A DNA stretch of 64,000 nucleotides from IMGVR_UViG_3300027668_000008:62001-126000; one strand, 5' to 3'; shown: positions 552-47,052, counted from the stretch's first letter. Notes: generated by a model not told the origin, from the sequence alone. Translations and numbers: made by a program.

Positions 552-1267
552 GTTACATACTCTGTAAAGATACTTAACCCTGTTTTTTCTTCCATACCGT
601 TTTCTAAAAAATTACTAGCACAATGTAGTCTAGCACAATCAAATATAATAGCATCACCTGGTACCCAAGGGCATTCTGATTCAATACTAAAACCTTCTAA
701 CCATTCTTGTTTCATATGTCCTGTATCTGTATTAGGTATTCTATTGTCTTGATGTAAGTTATGTACTCCGGAGTATTCAAATATAGGCTCATTGCCTTTC
801 TCATACATTTGTGCTGAATCTTTATTCTTAAAACACTTTACTGGTCTATCGAAATACATTTGATCAAATATGTAAAATTTTGCGTCATCTAACATAGGAA
901 GTTGGTATGTTGTGTATACTTTTTCTAAAGGCAATACAATACATTTACCCGGAATAATAGCATGATCTTTAGGAACATCATTATGGAGTATGTGTGGTTT
1001 CCTTACTGTAAAGTAATTACCACCGAATGGTTTAATTTTTGCATCTAGTACACTTTCAACACGTTTCATTATGTTTTGATAATGATGATCACTTTTATGA
1101 GGTAACTTACTAACAACAGGACCTGTGTTCTTAAACACCTTCTCATGGTCCGGTCTATCTTTATGTATGTTTAGTAAGTGTATTTGTTCAACTTCGGATA
1201 AGAAGTTTTTAATTGTGATTGTCGGTGAAGTGTTGTCTATTATTTGCTGTTGTCGTTCGTTGAGCAT
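548..1267 (-). CDS. 2OG-Fe(II) oxygenase-like (PhyH-like) protein
   Basis: HxD (LHND) and distal His in W-x-PGDAIIFD-x-x-RLH. Confidence 0.65.
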   Translation of the reverse strand: MLNERQQQIIDNTSPTITIKNFLSEVEQIHLLNIHKDRPDHEKVFKNTGPVVSKLPHKSDHHYQNIMKRVESVLDAKIKPFGGNYFTVRKPHILHNDVPKDHAIIPGKCIVLPLEKVYTTYQLPMLDDAKFYIFDQMYFDRPVKCFKNKDSAQMYEKGNEPIFEYSGVHNLHQDNRIPNTDTGHMKQEWLEGFSIESECPWVPGDAIIFDCARLHCASNFLENGMEEKTGLSIFTEYVT

Positions 1268-1407
1268 TGTTTACATCTACACTGTTTGCAGACTTCAATT
1301 TGTCTGTATTCTGCTGGTTGTTCGCTAGGGTAGTCTTTTTCTTCTCGCCATAACGGACTTCCACAATGGCTGTGGTGTCCACAATTTTGACAAGAATTAG
1401 AAGTCAT
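1240..1407 (-). CDS. 55-aa Cys/His-rich putative zinc-binding protein (not in ORF track)
   Basis: MTSNSCQNCGHHSHCG...IEVCKQCRCKQCSTNDNSK; fills the gap between two co-oriented genes. Confidence 0.7.
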   Translation of the reverse strand: MTSNSCQNCGHHSHCGSPLWREEKDYPSEQPAEYRQIEVCKQCRCKQCSTNDNSK

Positions 1408-1413: not shown

Positions 1414-4113
1414 TTATAATCCTGATAGGTATTTAATTCTATCTAACTCTACACTCTCGTTTACATCAGCGGCTAGTTTTTGCTTGTCGCCTTCGAGTTC
1501 TTTAGCAAGAGCAGGATCGGCTTTGTATTTGTCCGAACCAGATATAAATCTTTGGTATGCTATACTGTTTACTTTTTTATCAGCAAGTGTTACTAACATT
1601 TGTTCCATTTCTTTAACTCCAATTGAGTCACCTGTGTATTCTGACACTGGTCCTTCTGTTTCAGCAACACTATGGTCACCTTTTTTATTCATCATACCAA
1701 ATACTAGGTTTGTTACTTTAATCATACCTGCTTTAGTACCCATCATGCCAAGTAACTTTGCTTGGTTTTGTGGATTAATCTTATCAAATACTTGTGTAAT
1801 AGCACTTGCACTATACAAGTCTACACTCATTTGTCCGTCTGCGAACTTAACAGGCATATTTTGCTTGTCTGCAACAATCTTTCTCAATGTATCTAATGCT
1901 ACATTACTATGTGTTGCTTGTTCATCTGGACTTGCTATTTCTGTAATTTTGTTTTGTGCATAATAGTCAATTATTTCTTGTGCAGTGTCAAACGATTCTT
2001 GTCCTGCTTCGCCAGTGCTTACCCAGAAACTATCTGAACCACTATCAAAACTAGCACCGCCAATTATTTCATCATTGTACATAATATGTATGTCATCGCC
2101 ATCGTCTTTAACTACTGAATACCCGTCTGCTTGTGCAAGTACGGCATCAATTGCTTCTGACTTAATAGGTAACTCAGGATCAAATGCTTTCCATTCATCA
2201 TATGTTAGATAAATGTCTGTGTCTGGATCGTAATACTTGCCTTCTTTAGGATCGTAATAAACAACTTTACCTGAACGTGTCATAATAGGACCTTCTAGTC
2301 CATCTCTTGCTACATACTTGGAAGGCATATCTGGAAGAATTGAATATCCTTCATCTATGTCTAACCAACTTTTATATTGTGAAATTTCTTTTTCATAAGA
2401 TGCTTTACCTGTGTCATTCATCTTTGCCATCATGTACTCTGCATACTTGATAGCCGCTTTTAAATCTTCTTTTGAAGAATCTTTACTAGGATTAATAACT
2501 TCTGGTGGACTTGTGCTTTCCATAGGTTGTCCTGCCATCGGTGCACTTAATGTAAACTGTCCATGTTTAACGTTACCTTGATGTTTAAACTGTGGTCTAA
2601 TAAAAGTCATATTAAACTTATATTTCTTTGCCGCAATACTCATCTGTAGTTTGTCAACAATCTTGCCTTGTGCATTTGTGATAACAATTACTGGATCTTC
2701 AACTCCCATTAATGTATCTTTAACTGCTTCATTTAATGAAGCACTGTAGTTTTTAATACGTTCGTACATATCTTCTGGTATCTCTACATTGATATCTTCG
2801 TTCGCTTTAACATAATTCTTAATCATCTTTTGTATATCGCTACCTGCTTTTGTATATGCTTGAGCAAACTCTTTTTCACTCATGCCCATTGCATCAGCAA
2901 GTCCAGGTTCGCCGTCACCACTATACATCATCATTAAATCTTTTTCCATGTCAGACATCATACCTTCGTCTAATCCTTCTAACATTGGGTAATATTTTTT
3001 AACTATAGCATCACGTTCAGCCATTTCATCACCGAGAATATGTCCACGTTGGTTATGAGCTTTCATAATCATTTCCATACGCTCTTGTTCATTTCTAGTA
3101 CCAAACATTCTTACAAGTTCCATTGCATTTTCTGTATGCATATTATAGTGTTCGTTTTCTTCAAATTCTTTTTTGCCAAATACATAAGGTATTTTAGCAA
3201 CACCTGTAGTATCTCTTGCTTCGTTTTCAATACTTTTTAATTGAAAGTCTGATAACTCTTGCATTGTGTCAAAAGGTCCACCTACCATCTTACCATGTCT
3301 AAATGCGTAAAACTTGCCTTCTTTGTTTACTGCTGTAAGTCCGTACTTGTTCATTTCATTCATTGCTTCAACAAATACTTCTACCATGTCATCGCCATTG
3401 TTGAGTCCACCTGGTGTAACTTGTACGTTTTTCTTACCCCAAATTCTAATTGCATCTTCCGGAGACATACTAGTCTGTTTCCAACGCTTTTCTTCTTCAA
3501 CTTTTTTAGTTTTTGGATTATCGTGTGTCCAACCCATGTCTTTCATATCTAAATGGTCTTTTTCTACCTTCGCCATTTTGCCTTCACCTGTTTTAGGATC
3601 GTACATCATGTGTGGTTTATATTCTTCTTCGGCGTGCATAGCCGCCATATGTTTCTTGTACTTTGCAGTACCTTTTTTATGTGGGCTTTTGCCTTCTTCT
3701 AAATCTGCACGGCTTATAAAGTCTTGAATTACATCAGCATCTAAACTTGTTAATAGTTCGTGCATTACTTTTTCATAACCATGCTTTTCGATCATGTCGT
3801 ATACTGGTTGTGTATAATATCCGCCTGCTTCAGTTACTATATCTTCGTTAGCACGTTTCATTGCGTTTGCTACACTAGGATGTTTTGATAGACCTTTTGC
3901 TAATTTCTCAATAGTTGCATGGGCACCATCATAATTACCATCTTTGTATCTTGGATCATTTAGAATTCCAAATGCCATTTTAATCTGTTTGTCTGTAAAC
4001 TGTGGTCTCATAGCCTTTGCTTGTGCCATGTTTTCTTCGCCTGCAGTTTCGACTGACATAGGCTTACGAGCTTCTAGTATTGGTTTGTTTTTTGCTATAT
4101 CAGTTAACTTCAT
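1414..4113 (-). CDS. 899-aa mosaic putative internal head (virion) protein
   Basis: String of short modules separated by hydrophobic-x-E sites; N-term MKLTDI..ILE; C-term ELDRIKYLSGL; in a late-promoter operon. Confidence 0.6.
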   Translation of the reverse strand: MKLTDIAKNKPILEARKPMSVETAGEENMAQAKAMRPQFTDKQIKMAFGILNDPRYKDGNYDGAHATIEKLAKGLSKHPSVANAMKRANEDIVTEAGGYYTQPVYDMIEKHGYEKVMHELLTSLDADVIQDFISRADLEEGKSPHKKGTAKYKKHMAAMHAEEEYKPHMMYDPKTGEGKMAKVEKDHLDMKDMGWTHDNPKTKKVEEEKRWKQTSMSPEDAIRIWGKKNVQVTPGGLNNGDDMVEVFVEAMNEMNKYGLTAVNKEGKFYAFRHGKMVGGPFDTMQELSDFQLKSIENEARDTTGVAKIPYVFGKKEFEENEHYNMHTENAMELVRMFGTRNEQERMEMIMKAHNQRGHILGDEMAERDAIVKKYYPMLEGLDEGMMSDMEKDLMMMYSGDGEPGLADAMGMSEKEFAQAYTKAGSDIQKMIKNYVKANEDINVEIPEDMYERIKNYSASLNEAVKDTLMGVEDPVIVITNAQGKIVDKLQMSIAAKKYKFNMTFIRPQFKHQGNVKHGQFTLSAPMAGQPMESTSPPEVINPSKDSSKEDLKAAIKYAEYMMAKMNDTGKASYEKEISQYKSWLDIDEGYSILPDMPSKYVARDGLEGPIMTRSGKVVYYDPKEGKYYDPDTDIYLTYDEWKAFDPELPIKSEAIDAVLAQADGYSVVKDDGDDIHIMYNDEIIGGASFDSGSDSFWVSTGEAGQESFDTAQEIIDYYAQNKITEIASPDEQATHSNVALDTLRKIVADKQNMPVKFADGQMSVDLYSASAITQVFDKINPQNQAKLLGMMGTKAGMIKVTNLVFGMMNKKGDHSVAETEGPVSEYTGDSIGVKEMEQMLVTLADKKVNSIAYQRFISGSDKYKADPALAKELEGDKQKLAADVNESVELDRIKYLSGL

Positions 4114-4114
4114 T

Positions 4115-4798
4115 TTATTTTTCCTCTGTAGATTCTTCGGTATTAATAGCAGTATCTAAATCTGCTTTTAATTTACCTTCAGAAGCAATGTGTCCCATTG
4201 CATCGTAATGTCCTGACTCTAGTGATTCGTAAGTACTTGACAAGTTTGTCACTACGTCCATTAATCCTGTAACATCTCCGCCAATGGCTTCAATCTTTCT
4301 TGCCATTAGTCCGTCTGCTCTAAATACTTTTTCCAATGAATTAATCATTGCTTGTGCCTTTTGAAACATATTATCAACATATGCTTCTTCAGGTGTTGCT
4401 TCTGTAACAACTTGTGCTTCTTTAAACTCTTTACCTTCTTCATGCGCCGTTTGTGCAAATGCTTCTACTACTTCGTCTGCACTAGCAAAGTCATCATTGT
4501 CAATAGTGTATGCATTATCTAATCTATCATACTGTCCACTAGCAACTACTTCTTCGTCAATATGCACATCAACATTAAAATGGTCTGAATGACTTTCTGT
4601 CATAACTAATTTAATATTGCCTTTTTGTGCAAGGATACTTTCATCTGATTTTGTTTCTTTATTAAACCTATCTAATATGCCACGCATATCATCAGCAGAT
4701 TCGTTCAAACTAGTTGTGTTAGTTTGTGGTGCTACTGTATAGTTGTCTTCCGACATCTCGTTAAGTTTATTTACTAGTGTTGCAAAATCATCTGACAT
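4115..4798 (-). CDS. acidic putative internal head protein
   Basis: LNE/VTE sites; same operon as 1414-4113. Confidence 0.55.
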   Translation of the reverse strand: MSDDFATLVNKLNEMSEDNYTVAPQTNTTSLNESADDMRGILDRFNKETKSDESILAQKGNIKLVMTESHSDHFNVDVHIDEEVVASGQYDRLDNAYTIDNDDFASADEVVEAFAQTAHEEGKEFKEAQVVTEATPEEAYVDNMFQKAQAMINSLEKVFRADGLMARKIEAIGGDVTGLMDVVTNLSSTYESLESGHYDAMGHIASEGKLKADLDTAINTEESTEEK

Positions 4799-4803
4799 AT
4801 TAA

Positions 4804-5157
4804 TTACCCTTTAATTGACTCTTCTGGTTGAATTGTAACCATTTCTGGTTCTGGTGCTTGAGTTGGTTCGTCAGCAATTACATCAATGTTAAGTTCGTCA
4901 CCTTGTTCTTGGTATTCCAAGTGGTGCTTAACACTACCCATGTAGTCTGCCGCTTTTGTAATTTTTGCCTGTACCCAGCCTTCAAGGCCTTGTTCTTCGG
5001 ATACGTTTTGTAACATTTTATGAAGCTCTATTGCATACTTGGCGATTTTATATAAATCCCCTTTAGCCATGCTAACTTCGTGATCTAATTCCATTGAACG
5101 TGTGTCAGAGGACAAATCTTCGTTTAATGTTTTGTTTTTAAAGTGCTTTGCTCTCAT
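4804..5157 (-). CDS. conserved phage protein, putative virion component
   Basis: DHEVSMA...LEGWVQAKITKAADY helical motif; N-terminal ..TLNE; TAAATA promoter upstream. Confidence 0.6.
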   Translation of the reverse strand: MRAKHFKNKTLNEDLSSDTRSMELDHEVSMAKGDLYKIAKYAIELHKMLQNVSEEQGLEGWVQAKITKAADYMGSVKHHLEYQEQGDELNIDVIADEPTQAPEPEMVTIQPEESIKG

Positions 5158-5187
5158 AATAACTCCAATATGCTTTGTACTATGTTG

Positions 5188-5193
5188 TATTTA
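5188..5193 (-). promoter_or_regulatory. T4-type late promoter (TAAATA)
   Basis: TAAATA 30 nt upstream of ATG 5157, with GGAG SD between. Confidence 0.65.
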
Positions 5194-5265
5194 TTCATTT
5201 AGAACAAATAAACTATCTTATATTAAACTACAATAGGTACTAATACACTGTAGTAAACAGTGGTA

Positions 5266-5493
5266 TTAAGCAAATATTGAGCTAACTTTTTGTGTGTAAG
5301 GCTGAAATTTAGTTTTCTTTTTACCTTTTGGGGTTGTATGCCCAAATGGATCTACTGCTTTACGAGCCTTTTTAGGACTAACAAACAATGGAAATGCAAT
5401 AGCGGCTCCTGCCACGTCAGCACTACTAGTAGCACCTGGTGTTGCGTCTTCTACAACATTGTTGTCTTGTGATGTTATTTCCCAAATTTTCAT
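5266..5493 (-). CDS. small putative internal head protein
   Basis: MKIWEI..VVE then ATPGATSS; basic C-terminus. Confidence 0.6.
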   Translation of the reverse strand: MKIWEITSQDNNVVEDATPGATSSADVAGAAIAFPLFVSPKKARKAVDPFGHTTPKGKKKTKFQPYTQKVSSIFA

Positions 5494-5498
5494 ATTAG

Positions 5499-5506
5499 TA
5501 TTTATA
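5499..5506 (-). promoter_or_regulatory. T4-type late promoter TATAAATA, probably leaderless transcript
   Basis: Full T4 late consensus 5 nt before ATG 5493. Confidence 0.7.
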
Positions 5507-5508
5507 CA

Positions 5509-6276
5509 TTAATGATGTTCAGTCATAGATAGTACTTTTAAGCAGTTTTCATATGTCTTTGGAACATTCATTACTAAATGAATACTTTCATCGCCCCAAC
5601 AGGCTGTTCTGTGTGTTTTTCTTGTATCCACATAGTAACATCTTCCTGGTTCGATATCGACTCGTCTATAGTTGTGTTCCCATTCGAAACTTCCGTGTCC
5701 TGTTGTGCCACTTAAGAATCCAACAAGTCTAAAACAATCTCTGCTTAAGAATGGTGCATCTCTGTGTGGTGGGAACCAACCGCCTTTGTTTAATTTTACT
5801 AGCATTGTTCTGCCTAGCATATCAAAGGCTTTTGTGATTGGGTGTAAAGCAGTTACATTATGAAATGCTTCAGTAGGGTAATGTAAATCAATTTCGTTAA
5901 TACGTTCGCCGTCTTTTTCTCCAAGACGTTTTCTAACTTCAGGCATACTTAGACTGTCACCGACACTGTCGCCTTCAGCACCTACAAGTAATAAACCTTC
6001 TCTATTGTTAGTGATACCTTCTCTGCGTAAGTAAGGTACCCACGAATCTTTGTACTGTTTCATTTCTTCTTTGAACAGTTTTAAATCAAAGTTAATTGAT
6101 AAAGGAACAAAGTCTCCAATAGCGTCTAACTGTAACTCACACTTAATGTCCTCTAACGTCGGCTCGGGCATAATGCCTTTGTTATAATGTCCTAGGTAGT
6201 TGGGTTGATGCTTCCGTTGTGGAACCCATTCAATCTTTTTACCATCTGATGTGAAGTCGTCGTCTTTGTGTGCCAT
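5509..6276 (-). CDS. AspH-like 2OG-Fe(II) oxygenase
   Basis: GGWFPPHRD (HxD), DTRKTH distal His, IHLV strand; sigma70 promoter TTGACT-N17-TATATT at 6304-6332. Confidence 0.7.
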   Translation of the reverse strand: MAHKDDDFTSDGKKIEWVPQRKHQPNYLGHYNKGIMPEPTLEDIKCELQLDAIGDFVPLSINFDLKLFKEEMKQYKDSWVPYLRREGITNNREGLLLVGAEGDSVGDSLSMPEVRKRLGEKDGERINEIDLHYPTEAFHNVTALHPITKAFDMLGRTMLVKLNKGGWFPPHRDAPFLSRDCFRLVGFLSGTTGHGSFEWEHNYRRVDIEPGRCYYVDTRKTHRTACWGDESIHLVMNVPKTYENCLKVLSMTEHH

Positions 6277-6341
6277 ATGGATTTGTTTCCTTATTATGTT
6301 ATTAATATACTAGGGATTGGGTAGAAAGTCAAGAAGAAAGT

Positions 6342-6833
6342 TTATTTTCTTTTCATTGCGGCAAATTTATCTGCTTGTGCTTTTCTGGCGGCTTTATCTT
6401 CAGCATCCATCTTGGCAACAGCCGCGTCTTTACGCTCCTGCGACTTAGGGTCTTCTGCCTTGGCTTTCTTTTTTTGCTTAGGGATACTCTTGCCACCATT
6501 ATAAGCGCCAGCCATCGCCGCTTGGTCTGATGCACTTGATCTTGCTTCGCCTACCTGTTCGCAGTCGTTAACTGTTTTGCCTTTATTCTTGCCAGTACCC
6601 GGTTTAGTGCCAACTTTTTTATATCCTGGCCAACACTTGTCTGGTCCCGCAGTTGCTTTTGCTTCATCAACGCCTTCAGTCTTTGGTGTCCACCAACTAC
6701 CTGTTTCGTCATTGCAATCATGTCCACAGTCTGTAGTAGGTTTGTGCATTTCGTCTCCACAATCCTTACATACCATTGTTTCTTTTATATTCTTAATCTT
6801 TGCGACTTCAGATAATAGTTCTTTAATTCTCAT
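6342..6833 (-). CDS. putative internal head protein
   Basis: MRIKELLSE N-terminus; CKDC..CGHDC and CWPGYKKVGTK..GKTVNDC modules. Confidence 0.6.
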   Translation of the reverse strand: MRIKELLSEVAKIKNIKETMVCKDCGDEMHKPTTDCGHDCNDETGSWWTPKTEGVDEAKATAGPDKCWPGYKKVGTKPGTGKNKGKTVNDCEQVGEARSSASDQAAMAGAYNGGKSIPKQKKKAKAEDPKSQERKDAAVAKMDAEDKAARKAQADKFAAMKRK

Positions 6834-7125
6834 TGTTTGTATCCTCGGCTACCTTAAAATTGTAAGCAAAGTTAATTTGCTTTGCTAACTGATTGCCCCT
6901 GTCTCTTTCGGTTTTCTTAGAGCTTTTTTTTAAATGGTTTGCTTTGGCTCTAAGTCTTTTTAAATCTGTTTTACTTATCTTGTCTCCAGCGCCTTTACCT
7001 AAGTAAGCCGCCGCTTTGCGTTTTAAACTTCCTGGTCTACTTCCTGGTTTCTCTGCTCCAGTAAAGTCTTCTAATAAACTGTCTAGTTCCTCGATGACCC
7101 ATTGTACTCTGTCTTGATAATCCAT
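6823..7125 (-). CDS. basic hypothetical protein, putative head protein
   Basis: Acidic leader ending LLE followed by a K/R-rich domain. Confidence 0.55.
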   Translation of the reverse strand: MDYQDRVQWVIEELDSLLEDFTGAEKPGSRPGSLKRKAAAYLGKGAGDKISKTDLKRLRAKANHLKKSSKKTERDRGNQLAKQINFAYNFKVAEDTNNEN

Positions 7126-7145
7126 AACAAGTCTCCCTGCCCTTA

Positions 7146-9401
7146 TTATTTATTTTCAGATAACTCACTAGCATCTACTAACCAAACTTTTGCTTCACCT
7201 TGTGTGCTAATAAGTCCTATTAGTCTAGTGTTACCTGCTACTAAGTCTAAACTTCCATTAGGTTGTTTTACTACAATTGGCATTTCAACTGTACCACTGT
7301 CCATTGCTTTTCGTAGTCTTGCAACTTTGTCTGGCTCTAAGTCATCTAAACTTTCACTACCGTCAGCACCTGTGTTGCTTATTTTCTTTACACTGTCTGT
7401 TGTTAGTGTAATTACTTTGCCTGTACTTGCAAGTTCTTCCCAACCCGTTTGTCCTAGTTTATTAAAGTATGTATAACGATTTGCTTCTTCCCATTCTACA
7501 TCAAATTGTGGCTTGACATAGTTAACATCTTCTGTAAGTCCTAAATTGAATAGTTTGTTAGGGTCACTGTTTTTTGCCGCCGATTTGTGTAGTAGTGGCG
7601 GACTACCTTTGCTGTCAATACTCATACCAAGTTTTTTTGCTTGTCTCTGAATCTCGCCAGGCTTAACATCATCAGTTGTATTCTGTGATGTAATTATTCC
7701 GTTTTCATTAAGATCTGCTTCAGTTACTACTGCTTGGTCACCGTAGTGTTTAAGATATAATGTTACCAAGTTACGCCAGTCTGCACCTTTTACAGTGTTT
7801 GCCACACTTTGGGCATAGTAACCTAAACTATGGTGCAATCCTTCTTTTTCTTTACGTTGTAGGATTGAATGCAATAGTTCTACTGCATATGCATATGTTT
7901 TCGGTTTAGTTATTTTGTTAATAAATCTAGGTATAGCATCAAAGGCATCATCACGTAAGAAACTATAATCGTTATTTTCTTTTAGCTCTGGATGATATTT
8001 CATTGTAACTTTTTTAGCATCTTTCTTAATAGATATACCGTCTACTAATACTTCTACTGGATATGTTTTAAACTCGTCATACCAATACGCCATGTCGTAT
8101 CCGCCGTCTTCTAGTAACTCTATAAGTACACCTCTGTCGTAATCTTTATCTTCTGCTTTGAGAACTTTAATTTTTCCTCTAGGTAATACTAAGTCTACAC
8201 CTTCATTATCTAAAGTTGCTTCTTCAACTTTCATTAGTTTACTAATGCGTGGTTTGAATAACTTTTGATCGCCTTTGTTAGTTTTTAATACTGGTTGATT
8301 GTGATCGTCTTTATCAAAGCCTTTAACTGTTGCTTTGCGATTCTTAAACTTACCAACCATCACTTCGTCACCAACATCTATGTTAGGAAGTTTTAATGTT
8401 TCTGCTTCGCCAATATAGTCATCTAATTTATCAATAGTGTGTTGTACATTAGAGTTTTCGTGCTTAATAGCAATGCCACCTGCCGCTGTCCAACTAGCAA
8501 TATTTTTGCCATAGTCGTCTATTAAACCATTCGGAGTACCGTCTGGTTGTTTAGCATACTTGGCTTTGTTATGGTCTAGTATAATTTTTTGTGGTGGGAA
8601 AGAACTTAGGTTCTTTTTTATCCATGCCATCTTCTGTGGCTTGGAATTAGCGTCTCCCGGAAGTGGAGCACTTAATATATTATATCTACCTTTATAGGCT
8701 TTAATTGCTGACAACAGTTGCAATGCATTACTTGTTAATGGCAAGTTAACCCAAAAGTTAGGCTGTTCTTTAATTTTGTTTAATGCTGAATCAACATCTT
8801 TAATGTCTTTCCAGTTGTTTACACCTACTAGTTTAGCCCACTCACCAAAAAAGTCTGCAAGTACACCGTCCATGTCTACATATAGTTCTGCAGTTTCGTC
8901 AAGTTCTTCGAACATATTAGTTGCTTCAACTACTACGTCACCATATAACTCTTGCCATGCTTGTGTGTTATCTAATTCTTCGTCAGTCCAACTAAATTCT
9001 TCTACTGTAAACTCGGGATTACTAGTTTTAAAATTCTTCTTACGCATTACAGTCTTTGCAATTAAGTCTAGTTCATTGTTGGCACTATCCCATTGTAAAA
9101 CGAAAGGTATGTTAACATCGGTTCTCATGTCTTTCATTACTGCTTGTGCATCAGGTCCTAGTTGTGCAATCTTCTTGCCATAGTACTTGTACTCTTGCTT
9201 AAAGATTCTAATAAGTTCTGCTACGTTGATTTGTTTTTCGTTGCGACTATCATTTACTCTGTCAAGGAAGTGTCTAGTAAACTCTACGTCTACTCCAACT
9301 TTAGCAAACAAACGGTCTGCGTAATCTTCTAAGGATCGCAAATCGCCTTGTGTGACTGGTAGACTTTCGTTGCCACTTTCTCTTAACCAACTATAGGACA
9401 T
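7146..9401 (-). CDS. multidomain protein: RNase-like domain + HAD 5'(3')-deoxyribonucleotidase + SH3/KOW-like + C-terminal ParB-like domain
   Basis: FTRHFLDRVNDSRN..LIAKTVMRK; LYVDMDGVLADF..LIDD; DVGDEVMVGK; MPIVVK..LVAGNTRL. Confidence 0.65.
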   Translation of the reverse strand: MSYSWLRESGNESLPVTQGDLRSLEDYADRLFAKVGVDVEFTRHFLDRVNDSRNEKQINVAELIRIFKQEYKYYGKKIAQLGPDAQAVMKDMRTDVNIPFVLQWDSANNELDLIAKTVMRKKNFKTSNPEFTVEEFSWTDEELDNTQAWQELYGDVVVEATNMFEELDETAELYVDMDGVLADFFGEWAKLVGVNNWKDIKDVDSALNKIKEQPNFWVNLPLTSNALQLLSAIKAYKGRYNILSAPLPGDANSKPQKMAWIKKNLSSFPPQKIILDHNKAKYAKQPDGTPNGLIDDYGKNIASWTAAGGIAIKHENSNVQHTIDKLDDYIGEAETLKLPNIDVGDEVMVGKFKNRKATVKGFDKDDHNQPVLKTNKGDQKLFKPRISKLMKVEEATLDNEGVDLVLPRGKIKVLKAEDKDYDRGVLIELLEDGGYDMAYWYDEFKTYPVEVLVDGISIKKDAKKVTMKYHPELKENNDYSFLRDDAFDAIPRFINKITKPKTYAYAVELLHSILQRKEKEGLHHSLGYYAQSVANTVKGADWRNLVTLYLKHYGDQAVVTEADLNENGIITSQNTTDDVKPGEIQRQAKKLGMSIDSKGSPPLLHKSAAKNSDPNKLFNLGLTEDVNYVKPQFDVEWEEANRYTYFNKLGQTGWEELASTGKVITLTTDSVKKISNTGADGSESLDDLEPDKVARLRKAMDSGTVEMPIVVKQPNGSLDLVAGNTRLIGLISTQGEAKVWLVDASELSENK

Positions 9402-10766
9402 TTATTTTCTCTTTTGTTTTCTAATCCAAGATTCCCTTAAATCTGTTTCAAAACTATCAAATACGTTTTTAGGGATACCTTGGCTTTGTTTGCCGCCTGC
9501 ACGTCTTTTCTTTTCAATATCATCAAATGCTGTTTCCAACGATGATACCATTAGTTGCACTATTCCACTATCTAAGTGGCTTTTAATATCTTTAAAGTCA
9601 CTTGGCATACCGCCGTTAGTTAATGTAGATGCTTTACTAGCCAAATCTTTTAACTTACTGTGTACGTTTGCCATTAATGATTTAATAGTATAACGCCCAA
9701 CACCTTGAACTAGTACTTCACTGTTCATAATGTCTTCACGGTCTAATGTGTAAAGGCTTTCAACGATTGCTGTATTGTTGTGTATTTGCACTACTGATTT
9801 TAACTGTTCAAGTTTAGTATTAATTTTATTTGAATCTTCAAACGTTAACGTTTTATCTTGTTTTAAAAGTTGTACTTCTTTTATAACTGCTTCCATTCTA
9901 CTAATGAAAGGTTTTTTCTTTTTACTACTTAAACTTAATTTCTTAACATTATCAAATTCGCCACCTACAGGAACATCTTTAGTTGCATTTTGTTTAGTAA
10001 CAATGCCTGCACCTGCGGCTTCCATGCTATACTTGGTATGCAAGTCGCTAATGCTATGTTCTGGCATTTTTTCAAGTTCTTTTCTTTTTACAAACTTGCT
10101 TGGTTTAGTTTGAATTTTTAAATTTGGTAACTTTTTATCTTTTTTCCATTGTCCTGTTTCTTTACGACCTGGATTCTTAACAACAAACTCTGTAATTTTT
10201 GCTTTCATCAGTTCGTGTATCTCTGGATTGTAACTACCAAATAAATCAGTAATCATTTGTTCCTGCATATCGTCGTCTGCTTTTGCAAAGTTGCTTCTAA
10301 ATTCTGTTGCACTTTTCATTGGCTCACCTAACACTTTAAAACTTAATGTTGGTACTGATACAATATATCCGTGCTTGTCTAATGACTCCATGCCTTTGCC
10401 TGCTTTTTGAAAGTAACTTGGGCTACCATCTTTCTTAGGCTTAAATGTAAAACGTGGATCTTCAGCCATATCTTTATCACTAACAGCAAACATTAATATT
10501 GTGTTTGCTGGATCGTAGTTTGCTACTAATTCTTGTGCTTGATATGGATTCTTAGTTTGTATAATAGCACTTGCAGGAATACCTGTGTGTATCATCATCT
10601 TCTTCTTTTCTTCAAAAGTAAAAGGACTTTTAGGTGGAAGAACTTTATCGCTTGTTGCAATGAATACTTTATCCGCACCGAACTTTTTAACTAATGCGGC
10701 ATACACACTAGCATGACCCTTATGAAAGGGGTGAAATCTGCCTGGATAAACTACTAAATGATTCAT
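9402..10766 (-). CDS. HIGH-motif cytidylyltransferase-like nucleotidyltransferase with C-terminal modules
   Basis: YPGRFHPFHKGH and SATEFR motifs; late promoter at 10792-10797. Confidence 0.75.
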   Translation of the reverse strand: MNHLVVYPGRFHPFHKGHASVYAALVKKFGADKVFIATSDKVLPPKSPFTFEEKKKMMIHTGIPASAIIQTKNPYQAQELVANYDPANTILMFAVSDKDMAEDPRFTFKPKKDGSPSYFQKAGKGMESLDKHGYIVSVPTLSFKVLGEPMKSATEFRSNFAKADDDMQEQMITDLFGSYNPEIHELMKAKITEFVVKNPGRKETGQWKKDKKLPNLKIQTKPSKFVKRKELEKMPEHSISDLHTKYSMEAAGAGIVTKQNATKDVPVGGEFDNVKKLSLSSKKKKPFISRMEAVIKEVQLLKQDKTLTFEDSNKINTKLEQLKSVVQIHNNTAIVESLYTLDREDIMNSEVLVQGVGRYTIKSLMANVHSKLKDLASKASTLTNGGMPSDFKDIKSHLDSGIVQLMVSSLETAFDDIEKKRRAGGKQSQGIPKNVFDSFETDLRESWIRKQKRK

Positions 10767-10794
10767 ACTTGTGTTATTCTCCTATATAGTGTAT

Positions 10795-11490
10795 TTATGT
10801 TGTTGATGAAGAGAACGTATGATAACCACTGTGGCCCAATTTAACATCATTGTGTGCATATACTTTACCGCCCATATCTTTCCAACGTTTGCAGAAAGTA
10901 TAGTCTTCGCTAATGTAATTGCCATTTGGAAGTAGCCATGTGTCGAATAACGCATACATAAACGGCTCAAATCGCTCGTCTAAGTTGAGTTGATTGTTAT
11001 ACTTTAAGTCGTGATACCTAGTAAACATCTTTTCAATACAACTTCGTTTAATCAACATAAACCCTGTGCCTATGTCTTCAACTTCTTGTATACCTGTTTC
11101 TAGTTGTTCTTCGCCATTTATAGTATTAGTAACATACTGTATGGGATAATTCTTTTTAGGATATAAACCACCGATAACATCTTTGTTTGCAGTTAACAAA
11201 CGATACACATCAGTAACATCAAATGAAATATCTGCATCTATAAACATGAAGTGTGTTGCTTCGGGGTTTGCCATACTCTTGGCAATCAGATTGTTTCTAG
11301 CTCTAGTAACTAAACTTTCGTTGGATATTGTTTCTAATGAAAATTTTAAATTATTACCTGAGAACCCTATTACGTTTCTAACAAAACTAACAAAGAAACT
11401 TTCAAATACGGCGCCGCCATAACAGGGTACCATAAAACTTATATGACTGTTCCGGATTGCCGAAACATCATTGTCGGTGAAATCTAACAC
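10795..11490 (-). CDS. GT-A fold glycosyltransferase
   Basis: ESLVTRARN, FMFIDAD (DxD), GTGFMLI, SEDYTFC, H-x-G. Confidence 0.8.
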   Translation of the reverse strand: MLDFTDNDVSAIRNSHISFMVPCYGGAVFESFFVSFVRNVIGFSGNNLKFSLETISNESLVTRARNNLIAKSMANPEATHFMFIDADISFDVTDVYRLLTANKDVIGGLYPKKNYPIQYVTNTINGEEQLETGIQEVEDIGTGFMLIKRSCIEKMFTRYHDLKYNNQLNLDERFEPFMYALFDTWLLPNGNYISEDYTFCKRWKDMGGKVYAHNDVKLGHSGYHTFSSSTT

Positions 11491-11891: not shown

Positions 11892-12638
11892 TTATGCTAT
11901 TCGGTAAGTGTATATCGTATTGATAACATCACCTGCTATTAAGTTAAGCATTAGAATGCTGTCATTATCTTTAGCATATATGTATTCTGGTAATGGCTTT
12001 TCCTTTAACGGGTGTCCATAATTATACATTCTTCTTGTTTCCCATGTCCAGGGCATTCTAATATCCCCTGACATTTGGTAATTTAGTAATGCATCAATAA
12101 CATCTTCTTGTACCCAGGAATACCGTGTAATACACTTTAAATTGTACACACCATATGGCAGTTTATCTGTAACAATAACGTTAGGATCTTCTGTAAGGCT
12201 TCTAGTGATTTCAACATTTTGTATACCGGTGTCTTCGGCACGTTTAACATAATCTTCACTATTAGAATAAAAGTCAACTATTGGACATTCGACTCTAACT
12301 TTACCTTGTGGATCAAAATTTTGTCTAAAAGCATATATGCTTAATAAGTACTCTACTTCTTTCTCATCAAGAACCCAATTACCACCTTTAGTAAAAAACC
12401 CTTGAGAAGTGTTTGCATACTCGAGTTCAGTGTTACGCATACGATCTAATGTATTAAGAACTTCCAAGTCGTCCTTGTAGTGATAACAACTTCGCATTAA
12501 ACTGGCTCCTCGTCTAAGACTGAACCTAATGCGATACTTAAATCGATTATAAAATAATCTCTGATTGGTACTCATACTACTACTTATCGTATTAGTAATT
12601 GTACTATACTGCTTTTGGTTTGAATTGATCCAGTACAA
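11892..12638 (-). CDS. hypothetical protein (true start may be downstream, MSTNQRL)
   Basis: Long ORF following clpA. Confidence 0.6.
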   Translation of the reverse strand: MYWINSNQKQYSTITNTISSSMSTNQRLFYNRFKYRIRFSLRRGASLMRSCYHYKDDLEVLNTLDRMRNTELEYANTSQGFFTKGGNWVLDEKEVEYLLSIYAFRQNFDPQGKVRVECPIVDFYSNSEDYVKRAEDTGIQNVEITRSLTEDPNVIVTDKLPYGVYNLKCITRYSWVQEDVIDALLNYQMSGDIRMPWTWETRRMYNYGHPLKEKPLPEYIYAKDNDSILMLNLIAGDVINTIYTYRIA

Positions 12639-14940
12639 TCAACCCGTTTGGGTCAACGCCTGGTGCTGGTGCAACTTTATCAACAATGTTATCTTCAACT
12701 TTATATTCAAAATCGAACTTGTCTTTTACAAAGTTTAACATAATTTTAGTTCCTGCAATAGGCTTGTCTTTTATAATTGCTTTGGATAACGGAATTTTAA
12801 TATCGTTTTCAATTACACGTTTCAAAGGTCTTGCACCCATCAATGGATCGTACCCACGTTTAGCAAGTTCCTCTACTGCACTTTCGCCAATAGTAATGTG
12901 CAATCCTTTTTCAATCATTAGTTCGTTTATCTCGTCAATAAACTTAATAACAATCTTACGCATAATGCCTTGATCCAGTTTATTAAACTTAATCATTCCG
13001 TCTAATCTGTTTCTAAATTCAGGAGCAAAGAACTTTTTAACTTCTTCTGTACTTGCATTGTCATTCTCTTCTGCAGAGTTAAAGCCAATACCTCGCTTCT
13101 CAGATTCTTTAGCACCTAAGTTACTTGTTAACAATATAATACAGTTTCGAGCATCTGCTCTTTTACCGTTTGTACTTGTTACAAATCCTTCGTCCATTAA
13201 CGATAGTAATACGTTAGTAACGTCAGGGTGTGCTTTCTCAATTTCATCAAACAAGATAATAGCATTAGGATTCTTTTCAACTTGGCTTACAAGTAAACCA
13301 CCACCTAAGTTACCATCTTCGTATCCTACATATCCTGGAGGTGCTCCAATAAGTCTAGCCACTGTGTGCTTCTCTTGGTACTCTCCCATATCAAATCTTA
13401 ACAATTTCATATGTAAGTTTTCACTTAATAGTTTAGCCAACTCTGTTTTACCAGTACCTGTTGGTCCTACTAGTAAGTAACTTCCGACTGGCTTACTGTG
13501 TGATTTTAATCCTGCTCTTGTTACAATTACTCTATCCATAATTGTGTCAACTGCTTTGTCTTGTCCGTATAGTTCGTGTTTAATTTTGCTTTGAATGTCG
13601 TCTAAATCTTCTTCTTCTTTGACTCCACTACTAGAACTACCTAATTGGTCTACAGGTATCTTAACTGCTTTACTTAATTCTTCAAGTATTTGTTGCTTTG
13701 TAATTTTAAAGTTACTTCTGTTTAATAACCGTTGTTTAGCACAAGCACTATCTATTAAGTCAATTGCTTTATCAGGTAAACGTTTATCAGTTTGGAACCT
13801 TACACTTAAATCAACTGCGGCATTAATTGCATCTACTGTAATTTTTGCAGTATGATACTCTTCAAAGTATTTCTTTAATCCTTTAAGGATATCTTTAGCA
13901 ACACCTGGAGTTGGTTCATCTACTGTTAGTCTGTAGAACCTTCTCATTAATGCTCTGTCTTTTTCAAAACTTGTGTTGTATTCTTCCCAGGTTGTACTTG
14001 CAATAACTCTTAGTCCTCTGGTAATATAAGGCTTAACCATTTGTGCAAAGTCAGGACCACTACCACTAGTAGCACCTGCACCTCTCATAGTATGTGCTTC
14101 ATCGATGAATACAATACTACCTTTTTTGGCTTGTAAACTTTCAAATACGTCTTTAATTTTTTCTTCGAACTCGCCTCTGTACTTACTACCTGCAACTAAT
14201 CCACCAATATCTAAACTGTAGATTGTTGCTTCTTTTAAGTACTCAGGTACTTCGCCATTAATAATTTTGTTTGCTAGTCCTTCTGCAATAGCAGTTTTAC
14301 CAACACCGGGATCGCCAACTAGTAGTACGTTACTTTTGTTTCTTTTACCTAGTATTTGACACAGTTCATCAATTTCAAACTGTCTACCGATAACAGGATC
14401 AATTTCGCCATTTTTTGCTAACTTGTTTAAGTCTACACAGAACTCATCTAATGTACGTTCTGCTTCTTCCTTATCTAATGCATCCATATGTGGATTGTCA
14501 TGTACATAAGTTTCATTAAAGAAATCAACTAATGCTTGTTTGCCAATACCAAACTTTTTGAACAAGAATACTGAATAACCTTTGTCCTCTTGACAGATAC
14601 TTAAAAAGATATCTATCGTTTGCATATGCTCTCTGCCACCAAATAGCACTTGTGTATATGCTCTGTTGAATACACGTTCTAATGCATGAGTTCTTAGAAG
14701 TTTAATCTCTTTACCTTCTGCTGTCTTTTTACCAAAGTTGTTTTCTGTAAGATACTTTACAAATGCATCATTAAGTCCTTGCCAATCTGAGCCATACTCT
14801 TCGATCATAATCCTAAAGTTTTTATAGTTGATTAACGCAAGTGATAAGTGTTCAGTTGTAACATATGTGTGTCCGTATTTTGCCGCGAACTCACTAGCCT
14901 TTTCGACTATCATTTCTATTTCTGGGTTAGGTCTTAACAT
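12604..14940 (-). CDS. clpA: ATP-dependent Clp protease ATPase subunit, ClpA-like
   Basis: Clp N-domain; GDPGVGKT/FIDEAH; GPTGTGKT/FDEIEKAH; IGF ClpP-docking loop; no ClpB middle domain. Confidence 0.92.
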   Translation of the reverse strand: MLRPNPEIEMIVEKASEFAAKYGHTYVTTEHLSLALINYKNFRIMIEEYGSDWQGLNDAFVKYLTENNFGKKTAEGKEIKLLRTHALERVFNRAYTQVLFGGREHMQTIDIFLSICQEDKGYSVFLFKKFGIGKQALVDFFNETYVHDNPHMDALDKEEAERTLDEFCVDLNKLAKNGEIDPVIGRQFEIDELCQILGKRNKSNVLLVGDPGVGKTAIAEGLANKIINGEVPEYLKEATIYSLDIGGLVAGSKYRGEFEEKIKDVFESLQAKKGSIVFIDEAHTMRGAGATSGSGPDFAQMVKPYITRGLRVIASTTWEEYNTSFEKDRALMRRFYRLTVDEPTPGVAKDILKGLKKYFEEYHTAKITVDAINAAVDLSVRFQTDKRLPDKAIDLIDSACAKQRLLNRSNFKITKQQILEELSKAVKIPVDQLGSSSSGVKEEEDLDDIQSKIKHELYGQDKAVDTIMDRVIVTRAGLKSHSKPVGSYLLVGPTGTGKTELAKLLSENLHMKLLRFDMGEYQEKHTVARLIGAPPGYVGYEDGNLGGGLLVSQVEKNPNAIILFDEIEKAHPDVTNVLLSLMDEGFVTSTNGKRADARNCIILLTSNLGAKESEKRGIGFNSAEENDNASTEEVKKFFAPEFRNRLDGMIKFNKLDQGIMRKIVIKFIDEINELMIEKGLHITIGESAVEELAKRGYDPLMGARPLKRVIENDIKIPLSKAIIKDKPIAGTKIMLNFVKDKFDFEYKVEDNIVDKVAPAPGVDPNGLIVLDQFKPKAV

Positions 14941-15400
14941 ATAATAACTCTTCCGGTATATTTGTATTGTTAACTCTTTGTTGGAACGTAATGCCTTTTA
15001 AGTGATCGTATTCATGTAAACACACTCTAGCATTTATCCCATCTAATATTTTCTTACTTTTGTTTCCTTTATGGTCTTGCCATTCTAGTTTAATCCATTC
15101 AGGTCTTTCTACTATAATGCTTTCGCCTGCAAAACTTAAACAGCCTTCGTCAAACTTACTTAATTCATCTCCCCATTCTAGTAACACAGGGTTGTAATAA
15201 GCATTATATTTTCCGTCTACAAATGATACAAACAAACTAGTATCTATTCCTACTTGATTTGCGGCTAGTCCAATACCATTTGATTCTCTCATAAATCCAA
15301 ACATAATAACAGATAAACGTTCGTTTTCTATTTTCTGTGCAAAGGTATCAAACACCACAGGTTGTGTAGTAATATTTAACAGTTCTTTTGTTAGTCTCAT
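14927..15400 (-). CDS. def: peptide deformylase
   Basis: GIGLAANQVG, EGCLS, HEYDH. Confidence 0.93.
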   Translation of the reverse strand: MRLTKELLNITTQPVVFDTFAQKIENERLSVIMFGFMRESNGIGLAANQVGIDTSLFVSFVDGKYNAYYNPVLLEWGDELSKFDEGCLSFAGESIIVERPEWIKLEWQDHKGNKSKKILDGINARVCLHEYDHLKGITFQQRVNNTNIPEELLYVKT

Positions 15401-46617: not shown

Positions 46618-46638
46618 ACGTTTTTGTTAATTTCTGGG

Positions 46639-46724: not shown

Positions 46725-46726
46725 TT

Positions 46727-47045: not shown

Positions 47046-47052
47046 CACCTAT

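What the first reader, a model, noticed from the sequence alone, without database searches (positions are those of the whole stretch)
1414..10766. Cluster of putative capsid-packaged polyproteins cut into modules at hydrophobic-x-E sites
Seen: consecutive late genes start with short leaders ending in (L/I/V)-x-E (ILE, LNE, LNE, VVE, LSE, LLE, LRE). The 899-aa protein is a chain of unrelated 20-70-aa modules bounded by such sites (VTE, LEE, VEE, LDE, LNE, IDE, ITE, VAE, VSE, VNE) and ends ELDRIKYLSGL. Known: T4 prohead protease gp21 cuts after (L/I)-x-E and removes the ~10-aa capsid-targeting leader of internal proteins. Inference: the phage packages polyproteins that mature in the head into dozens of small effectors injected with the DNA, a possible reservoir of anti-defence or takeover proteins.
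Basis: partly seen in the sequence, partly recalled or inferred. Interest (0 to 1): 0.68.

Follow-up and report, generated by a model that had tools for sequence, protein, structure and literature searches.

The report
Leader-tagged modular head proteins, jumbo phage
A 307-kb marine T4-like phage carries a late-gene cluster of proteins with short T4-style capsid-targeting leaders, two of them long chains of shuffled modules joined at glutamate residues, so they are probably packaged in the head and trimmed by the head protease, though no experiment shows this yet.

Summary
The window belongs to a 306,714-bp T4-like jumbo phage that encodes a gp21-type (S77) prohead protease. In 1414-10766, seven of nine minus-strand genes start with 8-19-residue leaders ending in hydrophobic-x-Glu, and late-promoter-like ATAAATA motifs precede four transcription units.

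In this genome alone the signal is modest (permutation p = 0.035). Relatives make it convincing. The leader M-[KR]-x-[KR]-[DEQ]-[ILF]-x-E recurs across related marine contigs and in cultured phages (Melnitz, immuto), in front of unrelated domains.

The count of [LIV]xE sites inside the 899-aa protein is at chance (13 against 12.5). Their positions are not. This protein and the 751-aa protein are mosaics whose modules appear in other orders, or alone, in homologues. Module edges fall after Glu (74% of 155 leader-anchored internal junctions, Asp 3%) and sit in AlphaFold confidence dips.

Homologues of the 751-aa protein add ParB, GNAT, CCA-type nucleotidyltransferase, lysozyme and SOD domains, like "polyvalent proteins". 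A cyanophage protein of the same module network was detected in purified virions.

Packaging and leader removal are likely. Cleavage between modules is plausible but unproven. An anti-defence role is speculative. I class this as a new variant of known kinds.

The parts
1414..4113 (-). 899-aa mosaic protein: a 14-residue leader followed by about 15 modules. Module edges fall after residues 14, 95, 140, 162, 207, 253, 296, 379/383, 462, 532, 588, 653, 725 and 835.
   Evidence: The homologues are mosaics with permuted modules. Module gains and losses among relatives about 70-95% identical are bounded by Glu. The AF2 model has mean pLDDT 50.8 and pTM 0.26, with confident blocks separated by dips at these edges.
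4072..4113 (-). Leader MKLTDIAKNKPILE of the 899-aa protein, a putative capsid-targeting propeptide cut after Glu14
   Evidence: The leader is conserved in P0002-P0007.
2155..2349 (-). OCRE-like beta module (residues 589-653, GYSILPDM...). It follows an N-terminal leader directly in many homologues.
   Evidence: Pfam OCRE E = 3e-5 on this segment, just below the curated cut-off, and phrog_13298 E = 1.5e-11. Glu precedes it in 46 of 52 internal contexts. pLDDT is 73-87.
2350..2727 (-). Two modules (residues 463-532 and 533-588) that are present or absent as whole units in near-identical relatives
   Evidence: In alignment A1, P0003/P0005/P0007 join SLNE directly to GYSILP, and P0006/P0008 join QPME directly to GYSILP.
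4115..4798 (-). 227-aa acidic protein with leader MSDDFATLVNKLNE (nt 4757-4798)
   Evidence: Its C-terminal part matches modules inside P0104/P0116.
4804..5157 (-). 117-aa protein with leader MRAKHFKNKTLNE (nt 5119-5157). Its module is widespread and occurs inside long mosaic proteins elsewhere.
   Evidence: 432 relatives were found in IMG/VR. The module sits inside P0048, P0098 and P0110, in P0098 and P0110 behind a retained internal leader MKIENIK.NQINE. It also matches cyanophage S-SM2 gp109.
5188..5194 (-). Late-promoter-like ATAAATA, 37 nt upstream of the 117-aa gene start (motif start to ATG)
5266..5493 (-). 75-aa basic protein (mature pI 10.2) with leader MKIWEITSQDNNVVE (nt 5449-5493)
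5499..5506 (-). TATAAATA, an exact T4 late-promoter consensus, just upstream of the 75-aa gene
5509..6276 (-). 255-aa cupin-like protein with no leader, probably an early gene embedded in the cluster and not part of the system
   Evidence: Weak Cupin_2 match. TTGACT-17-TATATT lies at 6332-6304.
6342..6833 (-). 163-aa basic protein with leader MRIKELLSE (nt 6807-6833) and a Cys-rich module shared with mosaic proteins
6823..7125 (-). 100-aa basic protein (mature pI 10.2) with a 19-residue leader ending in LLE (nt 7069-7125)
   Evidence: ATAAATA at 7147-7153 lies 28 nt upstream.
7146..9401 (-). 751-aa mosaic protein: leader MSYSWLRE (nt 9378-9401), then an N-terminal domain (residues 9-135), NT5C (170-332), a KOW-like module, further modules, and a ParB/Srx-like C-terminal domain (625-751)
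   Evidence: Pfam and PHROGs matches. The main homology breakpoints at 135, 165/169, 332, 431, 566 and 624 all fall at [LIVMF]xE sites, with weaker clusters at 339 and 401/403 that do not. Homologues fuse many other enzyme domains.
8406..8894 (-). NT5C 5'(3')-deoxyribonucleotidase domain (residues 170-332), preceded by ...NMFEELDE|
   Evidence: PF06941 E = 2e-5 and phrog_2643 E = 1e-21. In Melnitz and immuto it is a separate gene with its own leader.
7149..7529 (-). ParB/Srx-like domain (residues 625-751), appended after LTE. It is absent from the 542-aa near-identical variants.
   Evidence: AF2 pLDDT 93.8. All listed Foldseek hits (45 rows) are ParB/Noc/KorB/sulfiredoxin-type or uncharacterised proteins, with probability mostly 0.6-0.97 and E = 0.02-0.35. 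PF02195 matches 6 of 19 family members weakly.
9402..10766 (-). 454-aa cytidylyltransferase-like protein (domain at nt 10467-10751) with no leader in this genome. Homologues carry MKLLELLE or MRIKE-type leaders.
   Evidence: PF01467 E = 1e-7. ATAAATA at 10792-10798 lies upstream.

Best explanation
The cluster encodes internal head proteins of a T4-like jumbo phage.

Proposed mechanism (inferred unless marked otherwise).
- Each protein is made late in infection.
- A short N-terminal capsid-targeting leader (consensus M-[KR]-x-[KR]-[DEQ]-[ILF]-x-E) carries it into the prohead core.
- The phage's gp21-type, Glu-specific prohead protease removes the leader. The protease gene itself is shown to be present.
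- The two long proteins (899 and 751 aa) are fusions of the same kind of cassette that occurs elsewhere as small stand-alone genes with leaders.
- Their modules are joined at Glu residues that the protease probably also cuts. The head would then hold a mix of small basic or acidic peptides, small folded domains and enzymes (5'-nucleotidase, ParB/Srx-like).
- These products would leave the head with the DNA at infection.
- Because every cassette carries its own Glu joint, cassettes can be gained, lost and reordered without harming their neighbours. This would explain the extreme mosaicism seen in relatives.

My separate estimates are about 0.7 for packaging with leader removal, about 0.5 for cleavage between modules, and about 0.3 for an anti-defence or takeover role.
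For: Protease and timing.
- A Peptidase_S77 / head maturation protease is encoded in the genome.
- The capsid protein propeptide ends in HLSE|A.
- ATAAATA occurs only 77 times in the genome, and 44 ORFs have it within 60 nt upstream of their start. These include the portal gene and large, mostly unannotated ORFs near the head module, plus four units of this cluster.

Leader conservation.
- 49 of 76 distinct N-termini of 899-aa homologues and 36 of 64 of 751-aa homologues have a [LIVM]xE leader in front of unrelated domains.
- Of 866 ORFs in 80 related loci, 124 match the leader pattern. Positions 3-6, which the pattern did not constrain, are conserved.
- In the short leader class, Glu ends the pattern 71 times and Asp 11 times.
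- The same leaders occur in cultured phages: Melnitz, immuto next to the terminase and portal genes, and S-SM2 gp108, MKTLKQFLKE.
- The 71-aa gene at the gp67 position starts MDLNDLFE.

Module joints.
- Sequences that follow a leader in one protein are preceded by Glu in 74% of 155 internal contexts in other proteins, against 3% for Asp. Glu is the majority in 8 of 11 module families.
- Whole-module gains and losses among close relatives are bounded by Glu.
- All six main breakpoints of the 751-aa protein fall at [LIVMF]xE sites.
- Retained internal leaders are visible in some homologues.
- AF2 confidence dips coincide with the joints.

Virion evidence.
- T4-GC119 was detected in purified S-SM1 virions with 13 peptides (PMC3037559 Suppl. 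Table 8). It shares modules at 83-95% identity with homologues of the 899-aa protein.

Background from T4.
- The protease cuts after L/I-X-E, leaders of 10-19 residues target internal proteins to the head, and Asp at P1 blocks processing (PMC9026906).
Against: - No virion proteomics or N-terminal data exist for this phage or for any close relative.
- In this genome alone the leader pattern is only modestly above chance. The strict pattern matches about as often when another residue replaces Glu.
- The number of [LIV]xE sites in the 899-aa protein is at chance.
- P3 at internal joints is hydrophobic in only about 47% of cases.
- One module family (FDKKDF) is mostly preceded by Tyr, not Glu.
- An automated census of indel edges was noisy: Glu was the last shared residue in only 10 of 66 cases.
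- The S-SM1 virion protein has no typical leader, and it links to the window's proteins only through shared modules in third proteins.
- The cluster lies about 165 kb from the head genes.
- The OCRE-like module is a stand-alone gene in an early-looking region of KVP40-like phages.
Confidence: 0.55

Rival explanations
1. The proteins are packaged multidomain ('polyvalent') proteins that lose only the N-terminal leader and stay intact internally. On this view the Glu at the joints is left over from fusions between genes that each had a leader, or is simply a favoured linker residue.
For: - Retained internal leaders show that fusion of leader-bearing genes does happen.
- P3 at the joints is often not L/I/V.
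- The site count is at chance.
- Many polyvalent proteins, such as the N4 virion RNA polymerase, are delivered uncut (PMC5512222).
Against: - Glu is kept at 74% of joints against 3% for Asp, across unrelated module families and with changing upstream neighbours. That points to ongoing selection for a Glu-specific function.
- Most joints have no other remnant of a leader.
- The modules include 22-45-residue disordered stretches that make little sense as domains of a single protein.
Confidence: 0.2
2. The proteins are structural core, inner-body or DNA-condensing components of a large capsid, analogous to T4 gp22/gp67/gp68 or the phiKZ inner body. They would be cut up and partly expelled during maturation and would have no role inside the host.
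For: - Several products are very basic (pI 9-10) or very acidic.
- Much of the 899-aa protein is predicted disordered.
- T4 core proteins and phiKZ inner-body proteins are cut at several Glu sites (PMC9026906).
- The gp67-position gene has the same class of leader.
Against: - Core proteins are normally conserved and lie next to the head genes. These proteins are hypervariable, shuffled and located elsewhere.
- Enzyme domains (NT5C, ParB-like, GNAT, CCA-type nucleotidyltransferase, lysozyme, SOD) in the family fit payloads better than scaffolds.
Confidence: 0.12
3. The proteins are not in the virion at all. The N-terminal motif would serve another purpose (translation efficiency, localisation or turnover), and the proteins would act inside the cell late in infection.
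For: - MK/MR starts are common in AT-rich genomes.
- The strict pattern is not Glu-specific across this genome.
- The cluster is far from the head module.
- NT5C and nucleotidyltransferases are ordinary phage metabolic genes.
Against: - The motif is conserved at the protein level, with a hydrophobic P3 and Glu rather than Asp at P1, at variable distances from Met.
- It co-occurs with a Glu-specific head protease.
- In immuto and S-SM2 the genes lie beside the terminase and portal genes.
- A family member was detected in virions.
Confidence: 0.08

Closest known systems
T4 internal proteins IPI/IPII/IPIII and Alt, targeted by the capsid-targeting sequence and processed by gp21
   Same: Both have a short N-terminal leader ending in hydrophobic-x-Glu, a gp21-type protease in the genome, late genes, diverse and fast-evolving payloads, and several small basic products. 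One leader elsewhere in this genome (MKTFKQYLME) and one in S-SM2 (MKTLKQFLKE) closely resemble T4's MKTYQEFIAE.
   Different: There is no sequence homology to the T4 internal proteins. The most common leader here is 8-9 residues rather than 10-19. The payloads include long multi-module chains and enzymes. The internal joints do not follow a strict L/I at P3. Nothing has been shown experimentally.
Polyvalent proteins of phages and conjugative elements (Iyer et al. 2017, PMC5512222)
   Same: Both combine many unrelated domains in one polypeptide with free mix-and-match between relatives. The domain repertoires overlap (ParB/Srx-like, lysozyme/SLT, GNAT, nucleotidyltransferases, HD/RelA-SpoT-like). 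Both lie in a late-gene context and are predicted to be delivered with the DNA.
   Different: No zincin-like MPTase, MuF or LPD hallmark domain was detected here. Processing would be done by the capsid protease acting in trans at Glu joints, not by a built-in peptidase. Many of the modules are 20-80-residue peptides rather than enzyme domains.
Inner-body and ejection proteins of phiKZ, 201phi2-1 and SPN3US, cut by a gp21-related protease
   Same: Both involve a jumbo phage, a distant gp21-type protease, cleavage after Glu at short motifs, several cuts per protein, and a large mass of internal protein.
   Different: The motif there is S/A/G-x-E, whereas here P3 is mostly V/L/I/M or variable. 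No homology was tested or seen. This phage belongs to the T4/PA5oct-like lineage by its capsid protein, not to the phiKZ lineage.
T4 prohead core proteins gp22, gp67 and gp68
   Same: They are cut by gp21 at several Glu sites into small peptides, some of which remain in the head.
   Different: They are conserved, essential for assembly and encoded in the head module. The proteins here are hypervariable and encoded elsewhere.
Cyanophage gene cluster T4-GC119 (S-SM1 gp115, S-SM2 gp109)
   Same: It belongs to the same module network. Its gene length varies tenfold between cyanophages (276-2985 nt). It was detected in purified S-SM1 virions.
   Different: It has been annotated only as a hypothetical or structural protein. 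It has no typical leader in S-SM1 or S-SM2. It lies between the small and large terminase genes.

Membership tests
T4-type internal proteins (leader-targeted, gp21-processed) | N-terminal propeptide of about 10-19 residues ending in L/I-x-Glu | tested here: met
   Seven of nine genes have leaders of 8-19 residues ending in ILE, LNE, LNE, VVE, LSE, LLE or LRE. One has V at P3.
T4-type internal proteins (leader-targeted, gp21-processed) | The genome encodes a gp21-type (S77) prohead protease | tested here: met
   PF03420 scores 99 bits, above the cut-off. phrog_207 head maturation protease matches at E = 1e-59.
T4-type internal proteins (leader-targeted, gp21-processed) | Late expression | tested here: inconclusive
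   Late-promoter-like ATAAATA motifs precede four units of the cluster and, elsewhere, the portal gene and large ORFs near the head module. Transcription was not measured.
T4-type internal proteins (leader-targeted, gp21-processed) | Sequence homology to T4 IPI, IPII, IPIII or Alt | tested here: not met
   Pfam and PHROGs scans gave no such match. The T4 internal proteins are themselves unrelated to one another, so this feature defines the family only weakly.
T4-type internal proteins (leader-targeted, gp21-processed) | Presence in the virion, removal of the leader, ejection into the host | not testable with these tools
   The only evidence is indirect: T4-GC119 was detected in S-SM1 virions (PMC3037559 Suppl. 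Table 8).
Polyvalent proteins (Iyer et al. 2017) | Two to fifteen unrelated domains in one polypeptide, with combinatorial architectures among relatives | tested here: met
   Modules are permuted in homologues of the 899-aa protein. Homologues of the 751-aa protein add ParB, PolyA_pol/CCA, GNAT, sigma70_r4, GH19/LysM/SLT, SOD, HD_4 and CTP_transf domains.
Polyvalent proteins (Iyer et al. 2017) | Hallmark domains: zincin-like MPTase, MuF, LPDs, DdrB-like ParB | tested here: inconclusive
   No MPTase, MuF or LPD was found in the window's proteins. LPD3 matched one of 19 members at E = 0.14. A ParB/Srx-like fold is supported by a confident model with weak but concordant structural and Pfam matches. 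Its DdrB-type subfamily was not tested.
Polyvalent proteins (Iyer et al. 2017) | Association with late or packaging genes | tested here: met
   Late-promoter-like motifs occur in this cluster. The equivalent genes lie next to the terminase and portal genes in immuto and S-SM2.
phiKZ-type inner-body or ejection proteins | Cleavage motif S/A/G-x-Glu | tested here: not met
   P3 at the leaders is L/I/V/M/F. At internal joints V, L, M and I are the most enriched residues.
phiKZ-type inner-body or ejection proteins | Homology to phiKZ or SPN3US inner-body proteins | not tested
   tblastn against the phage collection returned no phiKZ-like records for the 899-aa or 751-aa proteins. No profile search was made.

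The most novel reading that the evidence does not exclude
Marine T4-like and jumbo phages may maintain a combinatorial payload system. It would consist of a shared pool of dozens of small cassettes, each ending in a Glu site for the capsid protease. The cassettes would be expressed either singly behind a universal 8-10-residue capsid-targeting leader or strung together as polyproteins. The head protease would then release a phage-specific cocktail of peptides and enzymes that is injected with the DNA. On this view the protease site, not the gene, is the unit of exchange, and these loci would be a large, unexplored source of first-minute takeover and anti-defence factors in ocean phages.
Probability: 0.35. 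Interest if true: 0.8.

Novelty: new variant of a known kind. Interest (0 to 1): 0.6.

Why it matters
Injected head proteins act before any phage gene is expressed. T4 IPI, for example, blocks a restriction system. Outside T4 and the phiKZ-like phages such proteins are almost unknown.

If the reading holds, three things follow:
- A simple sequence rule (leader plus Glu joints) would identify the injected proteome of a very abundant group of ocean phages, with hundreds of related contigs already in hand.
- It would explain why these loci are so mosaic.
- It would show that a capsid protease can define exchangeable cassettes, much as in the polyproteins of RNA viruses.

The idea is directly testable, because Melnitz, immuto and S-SM1/S-SM2 are in culture and carry leader-bearing clusters or module-network members.

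Tried and rejected
- Megablast of 12 kb against the phage collection found no match.
- Foldseek of the whole 899-aa model against the PDB gave nothing below E = 0.7. The model is mostly low-confidence, so this says nothing either way.
- Complex prediction of the protease with residues 1-60 of the 117-aa protein returned 'no answer' (score 0.01). It is not evidence for or against binding.
- MAFFT alignments of homologue fragments to the full-length proteins (A2, A4) misplaced most C-terminal fragments. A filtered alignment (A3) was used for the 899-aa fold. The full 751-aa protein was not folded, and only its C-terminal domain was (A5).
- An automated census of large indel edges between pairs at least 80% identical was too noisy to use. 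Glu was the last shared residue in 10 of 66 cases, because one to four residues after the joint are often shared as well.
- HSP-end statistics gave only a 2.4-fold Glu enrichment, and Asp was also enriched 1.6-fold.
- Pfam did not detect ParB in the query's own C-terminus.
- The ending ELDRIKYLSGL is just the conserved end of the last module and is not a general C-terminal signal: 13 of 118 distinct C-termini are of similar type.
- The PA5oct virion proteome was considered as a test. No homologues of the cluster proteins were found in PA5oct-like records, and the paper does not discuss processing.
- The Melnitz paper does not mention these genes.
- Plus-strand ORFs in the region are short shadows of the minus-strand genes and were not pursued.

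Full report
**What the window is.** The window is bases 62001-126000 of a 306,714-bp IMG/VR virus record. The genome has a T4-type head module with portal, a Peptidase_S77/gp21 protease (99 bits; phrog_207 E = 1e-59), a scaffold-like protein and a gp23-type capsid protein. The capsid protein is 61-65% identical to those of PA5oct-like jumbo phages. Its N-terminus reads ...KRHLSE|AATSG at the place where T4 gp23 is cut.

**Genes in the flagged region.** Region 1414-10766 holds nine minus-strand genes, of 899, 227, 117, 75, 255, 163, 100, 751 and 454 aa.

**The observation: leaders.** The 255-aa cupin-like gene and the 454-aa cytidylyltransferase-like gene do not. Two more leader-bearing genes lie just left of the window (MRAKDFLIE, MKYTELLPISE). 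Others lie at genome 159-165 kb and at 197.9 kb (MKTFKQYLME, close to T4's MKTYQEFIAE).

Within this genome the statistics are modest:
- Seven hits in an eight-gene window gives permutation p = 0.035.
- A stricter pattern gives Fisher p = 6e-6 for genes 91-103, but that window was chosen after the fact. Genome-wide, the pattern matches about as often when another residue replaces Glu.

**The observation: internal sites.** The count of internal [LIV]xE sites in the 899-aa protein is at chance, 13 against 12.5 +/- 3.1.

**Late genes.**
- ATAAATA occurs only 77 times on both strands of this AT-rich genome.
- Forty-four ORFs have it within 60 nt upstream of their start, usually 27-40 nt away. These include the portal gene and large, mostly unannotated ORFs near the head module.
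- In the window it is depleted (22 against 35 expected) and 20 of the 22 copies lie on the coding strand.
- It precedes the 454-aa, 100-aa, 75-aa (full TATAAATA) and 117-aa genes, which are enough to drive the whole cluster.
- The 255-aa gene instead has TTGACT-17-TATATT.

**Comparative evidence for the leader.**
- Homologues of the 899-aa protein (295 at E <= 1e-3) and of the 751-aa protein (964) very often begin with an 8-11-residue leader. It is followed directly by quite different sequences. Examples are MRLHNIRE|GYSILP, MRLSNIEE|GNSPHKKG, MKLLELLE|..YPGRFHPFH, MRINEVDE|..YLDMDGVLADFF and MKLTQLIE|EKERPYVV.
- In 80 related IMG/VR loci, 124 of 866 distinct ORFs match the leader pattern.
- Positions the pattern left free are conserved: hydrophobic at 3, K/R at 4, and D/E/Q at 5 in over 90%.
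- In the short class, Glu ends the pattern 71 times against 11 for Asp.
- The cultured OM43 phage Melnitz has a cluster with MKKFSEIIE before the nucleotidyltransferase and MKSIVEVTSINE before NT5C.
- Flavobacterium phage immuto has such a cluster next to the terminase and portal genes.
- T4 capsid-targeting leaders are 10-19 residues long, gp21 cuts after L/I-X-E, and Asp at P1 blocks processing (PMC9026906).

**Modules and joints.** Homologues share only pieces of the 899-aa protein, often in a different order. P0010, for example, aligns q25-90, q249-391, q588-653, q720-829 and q836-899 at permuted positions.

Among relatives about 70-95% identical, whole modules are gained, lost or replaced exactly after Glu: after residues 95, 140, 162, 207, 253, 462, 532 and 588. 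One instance is SLNE|GYSILP in P0003 against SLNE|[126 residues]IDE|GYSILP here.

The cleanest test defines a module start independently, as the residue that follows a leader in some protein.
- When the same sequence occurs inside another protein (155 distinct upstream contexts), the preceding residue is Glu in 74% (9.9 times background) and Asp in 3%.
- P3 is V/L/I/M in 44%, and P1' is Gly in 60%.
- By family, Glu is the majority in 8 of 11 module families. The FDKKDF family is an exception.

In the 751-aa protein the main homology breakpoints (135, 165/169, 332, 431, 566, 624) all coincide with [LIVMF]xE sites. Weaker end clusters at 339 and 401/403 do not. Near-identical 542-aa variants end just before this protein's LTE|ParB-like domain.

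Some homologues keep a whole internal leader (...SENTE|MKIENIKENQINE|GVLDD...). This shows that long proteins arise by fusing leader-bearing genes.

The small proteins of this cluster (117, 163, 227 and 454 aa) share modules with the long mosaics.

**Structure.**
- AF2 on the 899-aa protein (82-row alignment) gives mean pLDDT 50.8 and pTM 0.26.
- Confident blocks lie at 37-89, 210-250, 260-293, 311-382, 538-585 and 592-645.
- Every dip between blocks contains a Glu joint (95, 207, 253, 296, 383, 532, 588, 653). About 60% of residues are low-confidence, so this is supportive rather than decisive.
- The C-terminal module of the 751-aa protein folds confidently (pLDDT 93.8). All listed Foldseek hits are ParB, Noc, KorB, sulfiredoxin-type or uncharacterised proteins, at weak E-values of 0.02-0.35. 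This agrees with weak PF02195 matches in 6 of 19 relatives.

**Function and kinship.** Precomputed Pfam domains in homologues of the 751-aa protein include NT5C, ParB, PolyA_pol/CCA, GNAT, sigma70_r4, GH19/LysM/SLT, Cu/Zn SOD, HD_4 and CTP_transf. This resembles the polyvalent proteins of Iyer et al. (PMC5512222), but their hallmark MPTase and LPD domains are missing. The mature products here range from very basic (pI 10.2) to very acidic, as in T4 heads.

**Experimental link.**
- The 117-aa protein matches S-SM2 gp109, which belongs to cyanophage gene cluster T4-GC119.
- That cluster is listed as 'Structural protein, Y, 13' in the S-SM1 virion proteome, and its gene length varies from 276 to 2985 nt (PMC3037559 Suppl. 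Table 8 and file S3).
- S-SM1 gp115 shares a module at 83-95% identity with more than a dozen homologues of the 899-aa protein. It has no direct match to the window's proteins and no typical leader.

**Conclusion.**
- The leaders, the late timing, the protease and the modular, Glu-jointed build are well supported.
- Packaging and leader removal are likely.
- Cleavage between modules is plausible, mainly because Glu is strongly preferred over Asp at the joints.
- An anti-defence role is only a guess based on the domain content.
- This is a new variant of known kinds (T4 internal proteins, polyvalent proteins, multiply cleaved inner-body proteins).

Noticed in passing
window 12604-16194 (-): Three proteostasis genes lie in a row right next to the cluster: a ClpA/ClpB-like double AAA+ protein (778 aa), a peptide deformylase (157 aa) and a full DnaJ (265 aa, J domain plus C-terminal domain).
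   Followed up: partly
window 5509-6276 (-), promoter 6332-6304: A 255-aa cupin-like gene with a sigma70-type promoter (TTGACT-17-TATATT) sits inside an otherwise late, leader-bearing cluster. It looks like an early gene inserted there.
   Followed up: partly
genome 236318-236533 (L003:10319-10534, -): The 71-aa gene between the portal and protease genes, at the position of T4 gp67, starts MDLNDLFE. This is the same 8-residue leader class as the cluster proteins. It matches only phrog_13986, of unknown function.
   Followed up: partly
genome 159166-165205 and 197861-198406: Further candidate leader-bearing late genes lie outside the window: MKASDFITE, MRISDLFE, MKLNELNDLTE and MKTFKQYLME. The last has an upstream ATAAATA and resembles the T4 leader MKTYQEFIAE.
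   Followed up: no
L004 (genome 59888-61832), just left of the window: The cluster extends beyond the window. A 354-aa gene (MRAKDFLIE, with a late motif upstream) and a 191-aa gene (MKYTELLPISE) lie there. The 191-aa protein shares a module with P0129.
   Followed up: partly
L086 (S-SM2 91376-93927) and L088 (S-SM1 98536-100023): Cyanophage gene cluster T4-GC119, lying after the small terminase gene (and before the large one in S-SM2), is a mosaic protein from the same module pool and a mass-spectrometry-detected virion protein in S-SM1. The neighbouring S-SM2 gp108 starts MKTLKQFLKE.
   Followed up: partly
L005 (Vibrio phage ValKK3 42580-42831): In KVP40-like phages the OCRE-like module is a stand-alone 83-aa protein starting MKSFNDFF...VKLQE, next to a nucleotidyltransferase and a Dda-like helicase.
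   Followed up: no
window 46544-50846 (-): Four tRNA genes: Gln-TTG, Leu-TAA, Trp-CCA and Arg-TCT.
   Followed up: no
window 1240-1407 (-): A 55-aa Cys/His-rich ORF (CQNCGHHSHC...CKQCRCKQC) lies directly downstream of the 899-aa gene. It overlaps the start of the next gene by 28 nt and was not examined.
   Followed up: no
whole genome: ATAAATA is strongly depleted (77 copies in 307 kb on both strands) except upstream of ORF starts on the coding strand. It therefore serves as a usable late-promoter marker for this phage.
   Followed up: partly
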